Shown: positions 12,857-56,059 of the stretch, piece after piece | Numbering within the stretch: position 1 is the first letter of the stretch | Layout of the letters: each line of letters starts with the position of its first letter | From: Pocillopora damicornis | Taxonomy: Eukaryota | Assembly: GCF_003704095.1 (NCBI RefSeq) | Contig: NW_020847417.1 | Location: 1-64,000, forward strand | Direction: 5' to 3' | Length of the DNA stretch: 64,000 nt | Position numbers and translations under genes: made by a program | The notes under the pieces: generated by a model | The model's input: the letters and a program-made list of their open reading frames with translations, nothing else | What the model was told of the DNA's origin: nothing | The model's database searches: none

Positions 12857-14027
12857 ATGCATCCACTTCTAAAGAAATCATTACTGCGTTTTGGATTCCT
12901 CCACGCGTACGCCATTCTAATTGCTTGGATTTTCACCATGATTGAAAAAAGAGATGAACCTGCTTTCAAAAGAAAGGAGGAGTCGCTGAGTAAACTCAGG
13001 AATGATATGAATAAGAAATATAACATAACCGATGACGACTTTAATAGTTTTGTAAATCGTGCAGCGGCGGCTGTGATTGAGGGTGATGAACTGGACTGGA
13101 CTTTGCTTAACAGTCTCACATTCACCTTGACCACTTTCACCACAATAGGTAAGAGAAAAGGGTCAGCGCATGCCGTGTACAATGTTAATTAAAGCTTGTC
13201 TATTTGGGCAATGAGTATATCCACTTCTTTTTTATTTTAAGTTCTAACAGTTAAGGGGACCTTATCTGTTTGTATTTTCGTTTGTTTTTGTTTTTGTTTT
13301 TTTTGTTTTTGGTTTTTGCCCCTGAGTGTTTGGTGATTTGCTTCTAACCTCTGTACAAATCTTAAATGTAAAGTAATGTAGAGTGGAGCAAAAATTATTC
13401 ATTTTTTTTATTTCAGGATATGGTATCATAACACCTAAAACAGAGCTTGGCAAAGGTATCACAATTCCTGTGTGCCTCCTTGGTATTCTCATCACCATGT
13501 TGGCCTTTAAAACTTCAGGAGAGCTTTTTGCTTCTTCTATTCGCCATCTCGTCATAAAGATAGAAAATAATCTATTTAAAAGGGAGGAGGTAAAGAATTT
13601 AAAGATCAAAAAACTCGTGGCATCATGCACCCTCATGTTTGCTTTGTATATCTTTACAAGTTTCACAGGCGCCTTCATGGAAAAGTGGAATTATGTGGAG
13701 AGCTTCTATGCGTGGTTTGCCACTTTCACCACAATTGGATTCGGCGACTACGTCCATTGTGAAGCGCTTTTAAGGGGCATGGGACGAGGGATAGACAATA
13801 CAGTTCATCTTGTGATATACATCTGCGTACTGTACCTTCCAACCATGATTGGCCTGAGTTGTATGTCATGTATTCTGGGTTGCATTGTGGATTCCATGGA
13901 TCAGATTCGCCACTTTCGTGATGGCTGTATAGATAGCTGCGTACACTTACACTCAAGCATAAGACACAAGCTCTGCTGCAAGAAGGAAAATCAGGTTGAG
14001 TGCCAAAATCAAGTAATTTCTGCCTGA
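12857..14027 (+). CDS. K2P (TASK-like) potassium channel K1, 300 aa
   Basis: Exons 12857-13148 and 13417-14027; P1 TTIG|YGIITP, P2 TTIGFGDYVH; four TM segments; cap sequon KYNIT. Confidence 0.9.
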
Positions 14028-15228
14028 AATTAGTGGAATCGCCAAAAAAGTTTTTGAATTAATCTCGTACCCATGATATTAAATTTTAACCCCCTGACCT
14101 TCCAATAATTACTAATCTTACCACGATCATCCGCGCGAGTGGATTATTTTAGTCAATAGCAACGGCCATCATGTGATTTCTCGTTTTTCATGGCAATTGA
14201 ATTGAACAACGAAATGCGCTTTCTCAGATAACAACCTAACTTATTACGCGCATTAAATAATTCTTAGGATGGGGGTCGGAGGTTGAATGTTCATATACAT
14301 TGAATCAATTTTTTCCCTCCTCGTCACCCTAACGAGTAATTCAGAAGTTGGTGGCTGAATAATAGAAGGGATTATGGTTCTCTCAAATTTTCTGAAAATT
14401 GACTAAGAAAGAGAAATGAAGTAAACAAAGACGGAGACGGCAACGAGAACGTTTTTAACCAAAAGGTTCAATAAGTGGATCAATAACTCAGCCATCATCT
14501 GCAAAACAGCATCGTGAAGTCAACGAGCTATCCATGCATGGTCTGAGGACAGAAGCCCCGTCAACGAATCTTTCAGTATCCATTAGGAACTTAACGCCAG
14601 ATGCGTTAAGCTGAAGTTGAAGTCTGGCGCAGCAAAAGAAGGTATACACATCCAGCCATCCTTAAAAAATACTTTTGGAAATGTTCAGTTTATTTGTTAA
14701 TCGACGTTTCCCTCACCGTAGTAATTCTGACTGCTTAAGATTTAAAGGGATGAATATGCCTAACTCCTGAAAATTAGATCTATATTCTATGCTGAATTTG
14801 ACCTTGCACTGTAAGTCAGAGATTTCGCTAGAGACGCATTCATAGATGACTAGGGAAGAGGTTAATGACTGGAGATGAAGTCATGGTCCAAACAAAGGGA
14901 GAGTAAACGATGATAATAGTGATAACAACGATAACAATGTTAATAACAGTCACTATGGAAACTACAATAGCAATAACAATATGGTTAAACGCCATCCGAT
15001 CGGCCTAAGCCGATCCAAATTAGACTTTGCTCGTAGAGGATTATCAAATGGCTAAGAATTTATCTCTGATCGTGAATATATTGAAAATGCTCATGGCACG
15101 GATTTAAGTCCGTGAACGTTCCAGTTATTGACTATATGTAAGATCACTGGAATTGCTGTATAATAATAGCAACAATATTGAAAAATACCAATAAATAGCG
15201 ATAATTTAACAGTATGTGACTTTAGGTA

Positions 15229-15285
15229 CGGAATTCGAACCCGGGCCACAACGGTGGAAGGCGAACGTTCTCACCATCCCCGCCC
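15229..15285 (-). repeat. tRNA-derived SINE 5' fragment
   Basis: Reverse complement reads gatggtgagaac...cccgggttcgaattcc (A/B box-like); no complete cloverleaf. Confidence 0.5.
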
Positions 15286-52440: not shown

Positions 52441-53161
52441 ATTTTTAGAGGAAATAATATTATTTCGAGTGCAATTTGGTGTCATTAAGCATGAGTAATT
52501 TCTTCAAAGACAACAAAATTACACAAGTCTGCGCGGAAAGCGCAATTTGTAGTCTTATTATTCGCACCAAATGAAACGAGTGATCGTGCTATTACTAAAG
52601 AATTTAAAAAATCGCCGGGTGCTTTGTCGAGTTCTAGAAGCACGCGGGAATTTCTAAGAACAGGAGAGAAGTGCGGAGAAGCACGAACAGAGGACGATTG
52701 CTTATCGTACTTCTCGAGTGTTCTTAAAAATTCCTAAGTGCCTATATAACTCAACAATGCTCAAGTAAGTTTGTTTACTTCTTTTATAAAATGTATCGTG
52801 AATTGCGCTTGCTCGTACTGATGACGTCCGTGCGTGCATTATATCTCAACAATGCACTCGTGTGACGTAAGGCGCGTGCTTTATGGAAATATAATGAACT
52901 CGTTCTGATCAATCACGGCGCGCGCATTTCTCTGAACATTTTATAGAGAATAATACATGGGCGCGCGTAGATAAGGAATTTCCCTTCTCGTGTTTAACTC
53001 GATAGCTCACGAATGAGCACAGCGAGCGAGTGAGATGTCGAGTTGAACATGAGAAGAAAAATTCCATATCTACGCGCGCCCTTGTATTATTTCGTTTATC
53101 ATATAAACTCAATAGCCCTTTATGCTGCTTTACTTTTAAAAACCCTAACAACACACGTTAA

Positions 53162-53816
53162 GTCCCCGTCCACACGTATCCGGATAAATCTGAAAACAGA
53201 TAAATATTTATACGGTTACGGGTTCCGTCCACACGTAAACGGTGTTTTCACACACCGAAAACAGATAAATTTGAAAACGCTCTCCAGAGTGGATAAATTT
53301 GAAAACGCTGGCTAAGCGTCTCCGTGTGGATGCCTTATCCGGATAAATTTGAAAACGATTTGAAAACGATGACGTAACAATTCAAACCTAGTCCAACGCG
53401 TGCTCTCGGCCGATCGACCATTAATGAAAACATGGCGAATAAACAAGCTCTAATTTCGGTACTAATGAGTCTCATTTCAAGCATTGTGGCTTATTTTCAG
53501 CTTCATATTGATATCGATGCGCGTGCGTGGCGGCCATGCTGTCACGGATTTCTGCCATGCGAACACTGTTGATAAGTTTGAGAAGCCCAAGAGCACAGCC
53601 AAGAGGATTCAGGCTCAGGATACGCGAGACTGCGGGCACATGTTTTGCTCTAAAGAGCATGCTCAGTGGGCGACGTCATCGTCTTCAAATCGTTTTGCGT
53701 TTCCGTGTGGACACCAAAAACGATTCACAAACGGCAACGTGTGGACGCGGATAAATTTGAAAACGGATAAATATTTATCCGTTTTCAAATTTATCCGGAT
53801 ACGTGTGGACGGGGCC
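53162..53816. mobile_element. PIF/Harbinger (Tourist-like) MITE
   Basis: ~50-bp TIRs (g(t/g)ccccgtccacacgtatccggataaat...); TAA duplication at 53159-53161 and 53817-53819; the empty site is visible in the paralogous arm near 51664; multiple subterminal ataaatttgaaaac repeats. Confidence 0.9.
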
Positions 53817-56059
53817 TAAAAAATACGATACTTTTTCACGTGTGTTGTTAGGGCTTTTCTTAGGGTGGGAAATCCTTGTATGACACCGCAGTTTACATGA
53901 TAATTGTTAATTATTTATAACGGTATCTGAACTGAGTGGAGCGCAATTTGGACTTAAATCATACGCGTGATTTCAAAATCGAACGGGCGTGCAGTGCTCG
54001 TTCGATTTGAAATCACATATATGATTTCACACCAAAATTGAACGAGACGAGGTTCAATTACCACTTTACTACATCCATTTTGAAATCGCCTAAATACAGG
54101 ACTTAGTCAGTTCAAATATTTTATTGATGCAGTACTGAGCCGATCTGAAATTAAATTCATGTCCATTTCTTGGGGGGCAAAAGTAAGAGTTAAGAAAAAA
54201 AAAAGTTGCAAAATTGCCACATGATACTCTTTGTCTTTCATTTTCCTGAAATTTGATCGGTTAAACAAGCCTTAAAATCTGATTGGTTGTTTTGTTTTTA
54301 GTTTAGCCTCCTCATTGGCTGGGAAAAAGATGCGATTTAAAGCAAAAAATGGTGCGATTCGTTAATAAATAGCATCGATTAGAACCAATCAGATTACAGG
54401 GACCACCAGTGATTTAAAAATGGGTATAATAAACAAGAAAAAAAGCATCACAGAAGGTCAAGACAAACGAAATTTTGACAGCGCGCGCGCTATTTATTAT
54501 TTGCACTCGTCTCACAACTTTGCACTCATGTTACATGAACAAAGCTAAACAAATAAGTTGCACAAGCTTTTCAAAGCCGACTTCGATTTTTTGGGAAGTA
54601 TTGCTCCAAGTAAATCCGCATAGGGTGCACCCTGCCCGTGAAANNNNNNNNNNNNNNNNNNNNNNNNNNNNNNNNNNNNNNNNNNNNNNNNNNNNNNNNN
54701 NNNNNNNNNNNNNNNNNNNNNNNNNNNNNNNNNNNNNNNNNNNTCTCAAGTACAGTATTCACAGCGAAAAAAATCTACCTTTCAGATTAAGATCTTTCAT
54801 ATGGTATATTTCACTCTTCTTGTTATTGTTCGGTCTTAAACCATCTCATTATTATAGGAAAATGTTATCTATTTGTCAACGCCAACGGTAAAAACAGATT
54901 CCAGTCTTACGACCTCGTCTCCTTAAATTGCTACAAATGATCATTAGAAAAACACTTTGTATTTAAATCAGGTGAGGTTTTTTTTTTTCGGCCCAAAATT
55001 CAATATTAAAAAAAATAATAATAAATTGCGCTGGTACGGCGTTCTCTCATGAGTTTTCATAAGCTCCTGTTTTCAAGCAATCAAAGTGATTTCCATTTTA
55101 ATGAAAACATAATAACCTGTGTCTATCCAGTGACTCTATGAGCAAGATATTTACCAGAACTTATTAACATGCTATTTCAGAAACAAATGTCACTTACCAA
55201 CAGTCGCCAACGTTGTCAGCGAAAAGCTGAGGGAACTAAGGAAGCTCCAATCCGCTTTATGACCAACTTGGACCACTTCGAAAGCTCTATGGATGAAACT
55301 TTTAAAATCGTTCTCCTTTATAGAAACATTGAACCTGTTTGTAAAGTTTGTTTGCAGCTCTCGAGAGAGTCTTAAATAAACATCCCTATTGTCTTCGGGC
55401 TTTTTCTCAATGCAGTAGAAAAGGCCTCCTCCAAACAAGGTATACGCAAAAAGCAGTGAGACTCTAAACAGACTTTTCATTAGCAGCTTCTTCATTTTTT
55501 TTTCGACTCTTCTACTTAGCGCTGTGGAATAAAATATAATACAAATTATTGGAATAAAGGCCGAGGCAGTTATCACCCCTTGACTCGTGCCATTTTGAAG
55601 GATACATGAAGACGCATTGTTTTTTGGCTTAAGTCCGGTCAGGAAATCAAAACAAATCCTGCTTTTATCAGCAAAGACGTATTCTAGCATATTTTTGTAG
55701 AAAAAAATGAGACCAGGACACGAACAAAATATTAAAATGAACAAACGTTAAAAAATGGCAATAAGAAAATCGTAAGCAACCCTTTTCGCTTTCTTTCAGG
55801 TTTATCAGAAGTTTTGTCTTCTTAGGTCGCTGTAAATTTCTCTCCTTCACCACTTAGAGTGTCATAAAGAGTCTAAAGGTAATTCAGTTTATCACAAAAA
55901 ACACCACCTCCTTCTTTCGCGTAGTGGGCAGCTTATGTACATCAATTAAGTCAAGACAGTGTTATTTTCCAAAGTAATATCTAACAGTGGGTGACATCAT
56001 TACGGGAAATGGTGATACCTTGCCGTGGTGATTACGACTGAACGGTCGACGTTGATAAT

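What the first reader, a model, noticed from the sequence alone, without database searches (positions are those of the whole stretch)
12857..55495. Tandem array of ten compact TASK-like K2P channel genes undergoing birth-and-death evolution
Seen: ten loci in ~43 kb. Each encodes, or once encoded, a ~300-317 aa 4TM/2P subunit with a very short N-terminus and an N-glycosylation sequon in a short cap (mostly [K/R][Y/F]Nx[S/T]). Wherever the junction is visible, a single phase-1 coding intron splits the first Gly of the P1 GYG. Six are intact, one is gap-split and three are pseudogenes. Two sub-clades are visible (K1-K4: MHPLL.../VDS.D.IR.FR; K6-K10: M.ELL.../VVSG..NSL.E) plus the divergent K5. 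Established: vertebrate KCNK3/KCNK9 (TASK-1/3) share the KYNIS-type cap, GYGH and this intron position, but occur as dispersed single genes. Inference: a lineage-specific, rapidly turning-over repertoire of leak channels; because K2Ps are dimers, heterodimerisation could give combinatorial diversity.
Basis: partly seen in the sequence, partly recalled or inferred. Interest (0 to 1): 0.8.

Follow-up and report, generated by a model that had tools for sequence, protein, structure and literature searches.

The report
Conserved coral array of TASK-like K2P genes
This stretch of a stony-coral genome holds a real row of about ten related potassium leak-channel (K2P) genes, six intact and at least three of those transcribed, but most copies are old and shared gene-for-gene with other corals, so it is an ancient, slowly turning-over family rather than a recent burst.

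Summary
Ten K2P loci lie between 12857 and 55495. Six are intact two-coding-exon genes of 300-317 codons (K1, K2, K4, K5, K7, K8). Three are broken (K3, K6, K10). K9 is cut by an assembly gap. Every junction splits the first Gly codon of the P1 GYG after its first base. Spliced RNA contigs confirm this for K1, K2 and K8.

Corrections:
- This intron sits at all 37 K2P loci checked in the genome, so it is not TASK-specific.
- The array continues past the window with two more dead K9-type copies at 64.2 and 70.7 kb. A second nine-copy array lies on another contig.
- Most copies are not young. Another coral assembly carries K8, K7, K6, K5, K4-type, K2 and an inverted K1-like gene in the same order. 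Trees give one-to-one orthologs in Stylophora and that species.
- Ortholog dN/dS is 0.10-0.20, and dS between most paralogs is saturated. Only the K9-type copies are recent (dS 0.1-0.3), and these are mostly dead.

TASK-1/3 is the closest solved human subfamily by sequence, profile (133 vs 102 bits) and fold. Orthology was not tested by phylogeny. Verdict: real, ordinary in kind, moderately interesting.

The parts
12857..14027 (+). K1: intact gene. Exon 1 12857-13148, intron 13149-13416, exon 2 13417-14027 (300 codons). P1 GYGI, P2 GFG, sequon KYNIT.
   Evidence: Searches give the model; a polyA RNA contig of run X5 (1041 nt) joins 13148 to 13417 with GT..AG, and X6 shows the same joint. A 5'UTR acceptor at 12854 appears as a loose end in X1 and X5; an X6 contig also starts there with unlaid leading bases. 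Ortholog is Stylophora P0300.
16678..18076 (-). K2: intact gene. Exon 1 18076-17779, intron 17778-17307, exon 2 17306-16678 (308 codons). GYGH, P2 GFG, sequon KVNMS.
   Evidence: an X1 contig skips 472 bases with CT..AC on the + strand, exactly the predicted intron. Orthologs: Stylophora P0206 at 85% and species X at 77-83%. dN/dS 0.10-0.15.
20994..21850 (-). K3: pseudogene. Exon 1 21850-21559 is intact. Exon 2 remnant 21445-20994 lacks the first ~79 codons (P1 YG through M2) and has a frameshift in P2.
   Evidence: Stylophora ortholog P0241: 78% over exon 1 and 67% over the C-terminal part, and it retains the region missing here.
23277..24817 (-). K4: intact gene. Exon 1 24817-24526, exon 2 23893-23277 (302 codons). 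GYGN, P2 GFG, sequon KYNMT.
   Evidence: It sits in a clade with K3/P0241 and two species-X genes (99 support).
27447..29656 (-). K5: intact, divergent gene. Exon 1 29656-29338, exon 2 28066-27447 (312 codons). GYGN, P2 GFGDF.
   Evidence: Syntenic ortholog in species X at 65-66%. dN/dS is 0.15 in exon 2 and 0.34 in exon 1. Nearest paralog is C4004:130284.
31162..32945 (-). K6: pseudogene. Exon 1 32945-32660 has an in-frame stop at codon 28. Exon 2 31634-31162 is truncated inside M4.
   Evidence: The species-X ortholog is intact in exon 2 (218 aa from GYG to the stop, ending RSNSI).
34364..35889 (-). K7: intact gene. Exon 1 35889-35592, exon 2 35004-34364 (312 codons). GYGH, GYG also in P2, C-terminus RSASV.
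   Evidence: Ortholog P0010 in species X lies 5.9 kb downstream of the K8 ortholog, the same spacing as here. dN/dS 0.20.
40356..41998 (-). K8: intact gene. Exon 1 41998-41701, exon 2 41011-40356 (317 codons). GYGH, GYG in P2, C-terminus RSTTV.
   Evidence: The 293-aa product P0002, from a 1349-nt contig of a public run, is 99% identical and reads straight across the predicted junction.
46417..46996 (-). K9: exon 2 open from the gap edge to its stop. The 5' end is lost in the gap at 46997-47096. C-terminus RSATL.
   Evidence: It is 94.4% nt-identical to K10 exon 2, with dS 0.11.
47844..48047 (+). K9/K10-type exon 1 fragment on the opposite strand, in a short piece bounded by N runs of 425 and 391 and interrupted by a 15-N run. 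Either a misoriented contig carrying K9's exon 1 or a real rearranged fragment.
   Evidence: 86.7% nt to K10 exon 1, inverted.
50308..55495 (-). K10: pseudogene. Exon 1 55495-55198 is intact with a GT donor. Exon 2 50698-50308 is frameshifted after 35 codons. The 4.5-kb interval holds a 0.8-kb inverted repeat (50844-51665 / 53817-54643) and two gaps.

Best explanation
The region is a genuine tandem array of K2P (two-pore-domain, 4TM/2P) potassium leak-channel genes in a stony coral. The coral is a pocilloporid, judged by its nearest named relative, Stylophora.

Gene structure: each functional member has two coding exons joined at a phase-1 intron inside the first Gly of the P1 GYG, plus at least one 5'UTR exon in K1.

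Protein (inferred): a ~300-317-residue subunit with a very short N-terminus, a cysteine-free glycosylated cap, two K+ selectivity filters and a short cytoplasmic tail. Such subunits are expected to dimerise into background K+ channels that set resting potential.

Place in the family: the array belongs to a coral-expanded K2P clade. That clade also includes a nine-gene array on contig C138. Its closest solved vertebrate relatives are TASK-1/TASK-3.

History: the array is old. Its sub-clades, gene order and orientations are shared with other coral genera. The intact genes are under purifying selection, and K1, K2 and K8 are shown to be transcribed and spliced.

Turnover follows a birth-and-death pattern but is slow for the core (K3 and K6 died in this lineage). 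It is fast only at one gap-rich, rearranged end, where K9-type copies duplicated recently and mostly decayed.

Shown: gene models, splicing, orthology and synteny, constraint, TASK-1/3 as best match. Inferred: K+ leak function, dimerisation, pH sensing via the GYGH histidine, 14-3-3-type control through the C-terminal R-S-x-S/T-hydrophobic end of K7-K9.
For: - Mapping and boundaries.
- Pfam Ion_trans_2 in every exon 2 tested.
- Spliced RNA contigs: K1 in polyA runs X5 and X6, K2 in X1. K8 through P0002.
- Genome-wide census: about 38 K2P exon-2 loci, including clusters on C138 (9), C4004 (6) and C4207 (3).
- Synteny: ENA assembly ERZ25067556 contig ctg25073 carries K8, K7, an extra K7/K8-type gene, K6, K5, K4a, K4b, K2 and then an inverted K1/K2-type gene, in the same order and orientation at 57-83% amino-acid identity.
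- Tree: one-to-one orthologs with 98-100 support. Oculina genes G024866, G024867 and G024876, on one chromosome, span both sub-clades. Montipora and Porites fall in the K1-K4 clade.
- Selection: ortholog dN/dS 0.10-0.20 at dS 0.8-1.2. K9-type copies have dS 0.11-0.53 and dN/dS 0.41-0.70. Other paralogs are saturated.
- TASK affinity by single sequence: K8 exon 2 scores 77 bits to KCNK3 against 62 for the best non-TASK chain; K2 scores 66 against 47; P0018 scores 89 against 73.
- TASK affinity by profile of nine full-length clade members: KCNK3 133, KCNK9 123, TREK-2 102. The alignment is collinear from residue 7 and places the sequon on TASK-1's NLS.
- C138-clade member P0070: KCNK9 99 against 78 for TASK-2.
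- AlphaFold model of the K2 ortholog P0206: pLDDT 82, with M1, cap, P1, M2, M3, P2 and M4 helices. Its top 11 Foldseek hits are all TASK-1/3.
Against: - No phylogeny with vertebrate K2P subfamilies could be built, because no vertebrate sequences were available by reference. TASK orthology therefore rests on similarity ranks only.
- Two unrelated coral K2P clades (C4207, C4004) also score best on KCNK3, with smaller margins of 9 and 2.5 bits. TASK-1 may simply be the least derived human K2P.
- The HMMER alignments to TASK-1 end at about residue 235-240, before the distal-M4 gate, so conservation of that region is unknown.
- K1, K4 and K5 lack the His after GYG. K1-K5 lack the C-terminal basic-Ser motif.
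- No channel activity, dimerisation or cell-type data exist.
- RNA evidence comes from assembled contigs of related samples (mostly 95-99% identical), and run X1's RNA status is itself a guess apart from the spliced joint.
- K4, K5 and K7 have no direct transcript evidence here.
- The 47-58 kb zone is too gap-ridden to say whether K9 is complete.
Confidence: 0.85

Rival explanations
1. One reading: a species- or genus-level, lineage-specific repertoire that is turning over rapidly, with most copies born recently by local duplication.
For: - Five of twelve loci on the contig are dead: K3, K6, K10 and the copies at 64229 and 70728.
- K9-type copies differ by dS 0.11-0.3.
- Species X has its own recent pair, K4a/K4b (dS 0.19), and an extra K7/K8-type gene.
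Against: - Seven of the ten window loci have one-to-one orthologs in other genera.
- Order and orientation are conserved.
- dS between K1/K2/K4, K7/K8 and the sub-clades is saturated.
- Ortholog dN/dS is 0.10-0.20.
Confidence: 0.1
2. Part of the count is an assembly artefact. The K9/K10 zone (46.9-58 kb, and on to 72 kb) consists of misplaced, misoriented or duplicated small contigs, so K9 and K10 could be fewer real loci, or K9 could be a complete gene whose exon 1 piece was flipped.
For: - Sixteen N runs lie between 46997 and 58266.
- The exon 1 fragment at 47844-48047 sits between N runs on the wrong strand.
- Pieces matching K10's upstream region are individually inverted and out of order.
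- If flipped in place, the fragment would lie about 0.75-1.05 kb upstream of K9 exon 2. Introns here are 268-1271 bp.
Against: - K9 and K10 exon 2 differ at 5.6% of bases, and K10 carries frameshifts that K9 lacks. This is far above allelic divergence expected for haplotigs.
- The copies at 64229 and 70728 each have different lesions.
Confidence: 0.25
3. The clade is a cnidarian K2P lineage that is not orthologous to bilaterian TASK. The resemblance (short N-terminus, two exons, GYGH, cap sequon, no cap cysteine) is ancestral or convergent, and TASK-1 scores best because it is the least derived human K2P.
For: - Other coral K2P clades also rank KCNK3 first.
- The GYG intron is universal in this genome.
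- The His, the P2 filter (GYG in K7-K9 against GFG) and the C-terminal motif vary within the array.
- The only bilaterian proteins retrieved in word searches carry mixed automatic names and form separate clades.
Against: - The margin over the next subfamily is large and consistent for the array clade and the C138 clade: 15-32 bits, against 2.5-9 bits for the control clades.
- Foldseek ranks eleven TASK-1/3 chains first.
Confidence: 0.4

Closest known systems
Vertebrate TASK-1/TASK-3 (KCNK3/KCNK9; structures 6RV2, 9MUH, 8K1J, 9G9V)
   Same: - Best match by phmmer, profile and Foldseek.
- Alignment is collinear from residue ~5-7, so the N-terminus is equally short.
- The N-glycosylation sequon aligns with TASK-1's Y-N-L-S.
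- GYGH in K2, K6-K8 and K10.
- No cap cysteine.
- Two coding exons split in the first Gly of GYG (the vertebrate gene structure is from general knowledge, not tested here).
- K7-K9 end in R-S-x-S/T-hydrophobic, reminiscent of the TASK C-terminal 14-3-3 site (from knowledge).
   Different: - Only about 25-28% identity.
- The alignments stop before distal M4, so the TASK gate region is not demonstrably conserved.
- K7-K9 have GYG rather than GFG in P2.
- K1, K4 and K5 lack the His.
- More than 20 clade members sit in two arrays here, against three dispersed genes in humans.
- Orthology is untested.
Nematode K2P (twk/sup-9) expansion
   Same: A large lineage-specific K2P repertoire. The literature notes K2P enrichment in nematodes (PMC12749960). 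This coral has about 38 K2P exon-2 loci.
   Different: - A different phylum and an independent expansion.
- The coral genes lie in conserved tandem arrays.
- PMC12749960 reports cnidarians as expanded in Kv, not K2P.
Cnidarian voltage-gated K+ channel expansions (PMC9989356)
   Same: Extensive K+-channel gene duplication in Cnidaria that dates to deep nodes rather than to single species.
   Different: That work concerns Kv families. No paper describing coral K2P arrays was found in four literature searches on the topic.

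Membership tests
K2P (KCNK) two-pore-domain K+ channels | Two pore (Ion_trans_2) domains and four TM helices in one subunit | tested here: met
   - Two Ion_trans_2 stretches in every exon 2 tested, plus the first half of P1 at the end of exon 1.
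- The model of ortholog P0206 shows M1, cap helices, pore helix 1, M2, M3, pore helix 2 and M4.
K2P (KCNK) two-pore-domain K+ channels | K+ selectivity signature T-x-G-Y/F-G in both P loops | tested here: met
   - P1 reads T-(T/S)-(I/V)-G-Y-G across the splice in all intact copies.
- P2 reads TIGFGD in K1, K2 and K4, TVGFGD in K5, and TIGYGD in K7 and K8.
K2P (KCNK) two-pore-domain K+ channels | Extracellular cap between M1 and P1 | tested here: met
   About 55 residues lie between M1 and pore helix 1, modelled as two helices (residues 47-65 and 72-90 of P0206). They carry the N-x-S/T sequon.
K2P (KCNK) two-pore-domain K+ channels | Dimeric assembly and K+-selective background current | not testable with these tools
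   Needs expression and electrophysiology.
TASK subfamily (KCNK3/9/15, sup-9) | Groups with bilaterian TASK, to the exclusion of other K2P subfamilies, in a phylogeny | not tested
   No vertebrate K2P sequences were obtainable by reference. The word search seeded with a mite 'KCNK15' returned only arthropod and mollusc proteins with inconsistent automatic names.
TASK subfamily (KCNK3/9/15, sup-9) | Highest similarity to TASK-1/3 among solved K2Ps | tested here: met
   - Profile: KCNK3 133 and KCNK9 123 against TREK-2 102.
- Single sequences give margins of 15-19 bits.
- The top 11 Foldseek hits are TASK-1/3.
- Caveat: control clades also rank KCNK3 first, by 2.5-9 bits.
TASK subfamily (KCNK3/9/15, sup-9) | Histidine directly after the P1 GYG (extracellular proton sensor) | tested here: inconclusive
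   Present in K2, K6, K7, K8 and K10. Absent in K1 (Ile), K4 (Asn) and K5 (Asn). It aligns with GYGH of TASK-1. From general knowledge, the His is not exclusive to TASK.
TASK subfamily (KCNK3/9/15, sup-9) | No cap-apex cysteine (no intersubunit disulfide) | tested here: met
   No Cys in residues 29-86 of any exon 1.
TASK subfamily (KCNK3/9/15, sup-9) | Two coding exons with the single coding intron in the first Gly of GYG | tested here: met
   Models; RNA joints; P0002. However, the intron position is shared by all 37 K2P loci checked in the genome. Only the absence of further coding introns is distinctive.
TASK subfamily (KCNK3/9/15, sup-9) | Distal-M4 gate motif of TASK-1/3 | tested here: inconclusive
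   HMMER alignments to 6RV2 and 9MUH end at chain residue ~235-240. The coral sequence there (L-N-x-L-V-D/E-S/A) was not aligned to the gate.
TASK subfamily (KCNK3/9/15, sup-9) | C-terminal basic-x-x-Ser/Thr-x-COOH (14-3-3 / ER-export switch) | tested here: inconclusive
   K7 ends RSASV, K8 RSTTV and K9 RSATL. The species-X K6 ortholog ends RSNSI, Oculina P0006 RSSTV and Orbicella P0038 RSASF. K1, K2, K4 and K5 have unrelated ends. This is motif-level resemblance only.

The most novel reading that the evidence does not exclude
Stony corals maintain a conserved set of more than 20 TASK-like genes in two arrays. The subunits differ systematically in three features: the proton-sensor His, the P2 filter (GYG against GFG) and a C-terminal 14-3-3-type switch. 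On this reading the genes form a diversified toolkit of acid-sensitive leak channels. They might also form heteromers, tuned to coral-specific pH microenvironments such as calcifying tissue or symbiont-bearing cells.
Probability: 0.1. Interest if true: 0.7.

Novelty: new member of a known kind. Interest (0 to 1): 0.4.

Why it matters
K2P leak channels set resting potential and, in the TASK group, respond to extracellular pH. In the literature I could search, cnidarians are noted for Kv expansions and nematodes for K2P expansions. This coral has about 38 K2P loci. More than 20 of them are in TASK-like arrays that are conserved across coral genera and under purifying selection.

That gives a defined, testable gene set for asking how corals control membrane potential and pH responses. 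It also gives a clean natural series of subunits that differ in the sensor His, the P2 filter and the C-terminal trafficking motif.

It is not a new kind of system. The proteins are ordinary K2Ps, and automatic annotation in related corals already labels them KCNK3/9/15-like.

Tried and rejected
- A metazoan K2P phylogeny. I tried to obtain bilaterian TASK sequences by seeding the word search with the mite protein named 'KCNK15'. The hits were arthropod and mollusc proteins with mixed automatic names (K18-like, twk-7-like, sup-9-like) and no vertebrate sequences, so no subfamily tree was built.
- Oculina and Stylophora synteny through exact-product look-ups of P0006 and P0241. Neither was on record. 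Oculina clustering is inferred only from shared chromosome length and the locus tags G024866, G024867 and G024876.
- Earlier notes of this scan, searched by place and by words. Nothing was found.
- A literature search for the conserved GYG intron in vertebrate KCNK genes gave nothing citable. That point rests on general knowledge and for this genome.
- The haplotype/assembly-duplicate idea was considered and rejected for K1-K8 on divergence. It is kept only for the K9/K10 zone.
- The large representative-protein search and the protein atlas were deliberately not used, because the family was not in doubt.
- Spliced models were never joined or sent to any tool. All searches were exon by exon by reference. 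Total lengths are arithmetic on coordinates. Full-length comparisons used database proteins (P0002, P0018, P0206 and others).
- The near-identical database protein P0030 was not used to read K9's gap.

Full report
SETTING

The window is the first 64 kb of contig C4052 (398,200 bp) of a 234.35-Mb assembly in 4,393 contigs. GC content is 37.6%, and there are 24 N runs. The closest named relatives of the encoded proteins are stony corals. Stylophora pistillata is closest (85% for the K2 ortholog), followed by Oculina, Orbicella, Montipora and Porites. The organism is therefore a scleractinian, most likely a pocilloporid. The assembly statistics recall a published Pocillopora assembly, but I did not verify that.

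THE OBSERVATION

tblastn of the window with its own exon translations finds paired exon-1-like and exon-2-like segments at ten places between 12.8 and 55.5 kb.

- Six loci are intact: K1 (+ strand), and K2, K4, K5, K7 and K8 (- strand). They have 300-317 codons by coordinate arithmetic.
- In every case exon 1 ends ...T-(T/S)-(I/V) followed by G|GT. Exon 2 begins after a polypyrimidine tract and AG with the last two bases of a Gly codon, then Y-G. This is a phase-1 intron in the first Gly of GYG.
- Pfam Ion_trans_2 hits each exon 2 twice.
- The cap sequon ([K/R][Y/F/V]N-x-[S/T]) is present in all intact copies. No cysteine lies in the cap.
- K3 has lost the intron's 3' part and about 79 codons of exon 2, and has a frameshift in P2.
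- K6 has a stop at codon 28 and a truncated M4.
- K10 has an intact exon 1, but its only exon 2 is 4.5 kb away and frameshifted. The interval holds a 0.8-kb inverted repeat.

GAPS

Three gaps (19922, 26754, 33778) are intergenic. The gap at 46997-47096 cuts K9. The exon 2 frame is open right up to the gap, so its first ~15-20 codons and acceptor are unread.

A K9/K10-type exon 1 fragment lies at 47844-48047 on the + strand. It sits in a short piece bounded by N runs of 425 and 391 bases and is interrupted by a 15-N run. Neighbouring pieces match K10's upstream region individually inverted and out of order. Whether K9 is complete cannot be decided from this scaffold. I did not fill or look up any gap.

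EXPRESSION AND SPLICING

Contigs of four public runs were laid on 12800-18100.

- A 1041-nt contig from polyA RNA run X5 joins 13148 to 13417 (GT..AG, 268 bases skipped). X6 shows the same joint. This is exactly the K1 model.
- Contigs of X1 and X5 carry unmatched sequence upstream of 12854, and an X6 contig starts there with unlaid leading bases. That indicates a 5'UTR exon spliced three bases before the ATG.
- An X1 contig skips 17307-17778 (CT..AC on the + strand), exactly the K2 intron.
- K8's junction is confirmed by P0002. This is a 293-residue product of a 1349-nt contig from a public run. It is 99% identical and reads through T-T-I-G-Y-G-H.
- K4, K5 and K7 have no direct transcript evidence here.

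THE ARRAY IS LARGER AND NOT UNIQUE

Three own-genome searches with K8, K2 and K5 exon 2 each return about 43 matches, which collapse to about 38 loci.

- On the same contig, outside the window, lie two more K9-type exon 2 copies at 64229 and 70728 (+ strand). Both have frameshifts and no exon 1. An unrelated K2P lies at 135 kb.
- Contig C138 carries nine two-exon copies in 40 kb.
- C4004 carries six copies and C4207 carries three.

At all 37 loci where the exon starts with G-Y/F-G, an AG acceptor sits at the same codon position. The GYG intron is therefore K2P-wide in this genome and cannot argue for TASK affinity. What is distinctive is that the array genes have no further coding intron.

AGE OF THE COPIES

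Walking along ENA assembly ERZ25067556 contig ctg25073 in five 20-kb steps, mapped, gives the following order. All genes lie on one strand until the last.

- K8 ortholog (73-74% aa)
- K7 ortholog (66-70%)
- An extra K7/K8-type gene
- K6 ortholog (69-71%, exon 2 intact)
- K5 ortholog (65-66%)
- Two K4-type genes
- K2 ortholog (77-83%)
- A GDSL-lipase gene
- An inverted K1/K2-type exon 2

This is the window's order and orientation, including the inverted member at the far end of the array, where K1 sits in the window.

An exon-2 tree of 102 rows pairs the following, with SH-aLRT support of 98-100:

- K1 with Stylophora P0300
- K2 with Stylophora P0206
- K3 with Stylophora P0241
- K5, K6, K7 and K8 with the species-X genes

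Oculina genes tagged G024866, G024867 and G024876, on one chromosome, fall in both sub-clades. Montipora and Porites sequences fall in the K1-K4 clade. K5 groups with a gene on C4004 rather than with its neighbours.

Nei-Gojobori estimates are:

- Orthologs: dS 0.8-1.2 with dN/dS 0.10-0.20.
- K6, dead here: dN/dS 0.16-0.28.
- K9-type copies: dS 0.11-0.53 with dN/dS 0.41-0.70.
- All other within-array pairs: dS saturated or incalculable.

The picture is birth-and-death evolution in the classic sense. The core is old and constrained, and there is one young, decaying, rearranged end.

TASK-LIKENESS

- Against all PDB chains, K8 exon 2 scores 77 bits on KCNK3 and 62 on the best non-TASK chain. K2 exon 2 scores 66 and 47.
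- Full-length Oculina P0018 scores 89 (KCNK3), 84 (KCNK9) and 73 (TREK-2), aligned from residue 5.
- A profile of nine full-length clade members scores 133, 123 and 102. The cap sequon falls on TASK-1's N-L-S, and GYGH falls on GYGH.
- The C138-clade protein P0070 scores 99 on KCNK9 against 78 on TASK-2.
- An AlphaFold model of P0206 (pLDDT 82) has the K2P helix order. Its first eleven Foldseek hits are TASK-1/3 chains.

Controls temper this. Two other coral K2P clades also rank KCNK3 first, by 9 and 2.5 bits, and a third ranks TASK-2/TREK first.

I could not obtain vertebrate sequences by reference for a tree. 'TASK-like' is therefore a well-supported resemblance, and orthology is open.

Within the array the TASK-type features are unevenly distributed.

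- The His follows GYG in K2, K6-K8 and K10, but not in K1, K4 or K5.
- K7, K8 and K9 end in R-S-x-S/T-hydrophobic. So do their relatives in three other corals. From general knowledge, this resembles the TASK C-terminal 14-3-3 site.
- K7-K9 have GYG in both filters.

MECHANISM (INFERRED)

Each intact gene encodes a K2P subunit that dimerises into a background K+ channel. The His-bearing members are candidates for external-acid inhibition. The K7-K9 tail is a candidate phospho-dependent trafficking switch. Heteromerisation is possible but untested.

NOVELTY

Four literature searches found no description of coral K2P arrays. PMC12749960 reports K2P enrichment in nematodes and Kv enrichment in cnidarians. 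The genes are automatically annotated as KCNK3/9/15-like in related corals. This is a new, well-documented member of a known kind: real, conserved and moderately interesting.

PROCEDURE NOTE

Spliced models were not joined or submitted anywhere. Searches were run exon by exon by reference.

Noticed in passing
window 16595-16624 (K2 3'UTR): A 30-nt core (starting AAGGTCATGAG) occurs 1,093 times in the genome at up to 2 mismatches, against 0 for the reversed control. In all four RNA runs it has word depth of 5,600-17,000, with unrelated sequence on both sides. It looks like the core of an abundant, heavily transcribed interspersed repeat.
   Followed up: partly
G000:C138:39795-80061: A second tandem array of nine two-exon K2P genes, all on the minus strand. 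It forms its own clade with Stylophora 'KCNK9-like' P0070 and Oculina 'sup-9-like' P0063, and it also scores best on TASK-3/TASK-1. Smaller clusters lie on C4004 (6 copies) and C4207 (3 copies).
   Followed up: partly
window 10466-11530 (-): An intact 355-aa ORF with HTH_Tnp_4 and DDE_Tnp_4 domains (E 1.5e-38), a Harbinger/PIF-type transposase, just upstream of the array.
   Followed up: no
window 9327-9947 (+): An ORF with a YqaJ-like recombinase / viral alkaline exonuclease domain (E 2.9e-15), running into the gap at 9949.
   Followed up: no
window 2279-2776 and 3319-3723 (-): Two ORFs, each with a uromodulin-like D8C domain (E about 1e-18). They are probably exons of a neighbouring gene.
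   Followed up: no
window 16891-17123: One X1 contig skips 231 bases inside K2 exon 2 with GT..AG on the PLUS strand, the strand opposite to K2. This could be an antisense transcript intron or a contig artefact.
   Followed up: no
window 50844-51665 and 53817-54643: A 0.8-kb inverted repeat (94.6% identical) inside the 4.5-kb interval between K10's exons. Further repeats are shared with 58-64 kb. Likely transposon insertions in the decaying end of the array.
   Followed up: no
L055:15606-16187 (ENA ERZ25067556 ctg25073): In the other coral, a GDSL-lipase gene and several small ORFs lie between the K2 ortholog and the inverted K1-like gene. In the window, K1 and K2 are only 2.6 kb apart and no translated match was found in the first 12.9 kb.
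   Followed up: partly
window 34364-35004, 40356-41011, 46417-46996: K7, K8 and K9 carry G-Y-G in the second pore loop as well as the first. K1, K2, K4, K5 and K6 have G-F-G there. The difference is conserved in the Oculina and Orbicella relatives.
   Followed up: partly
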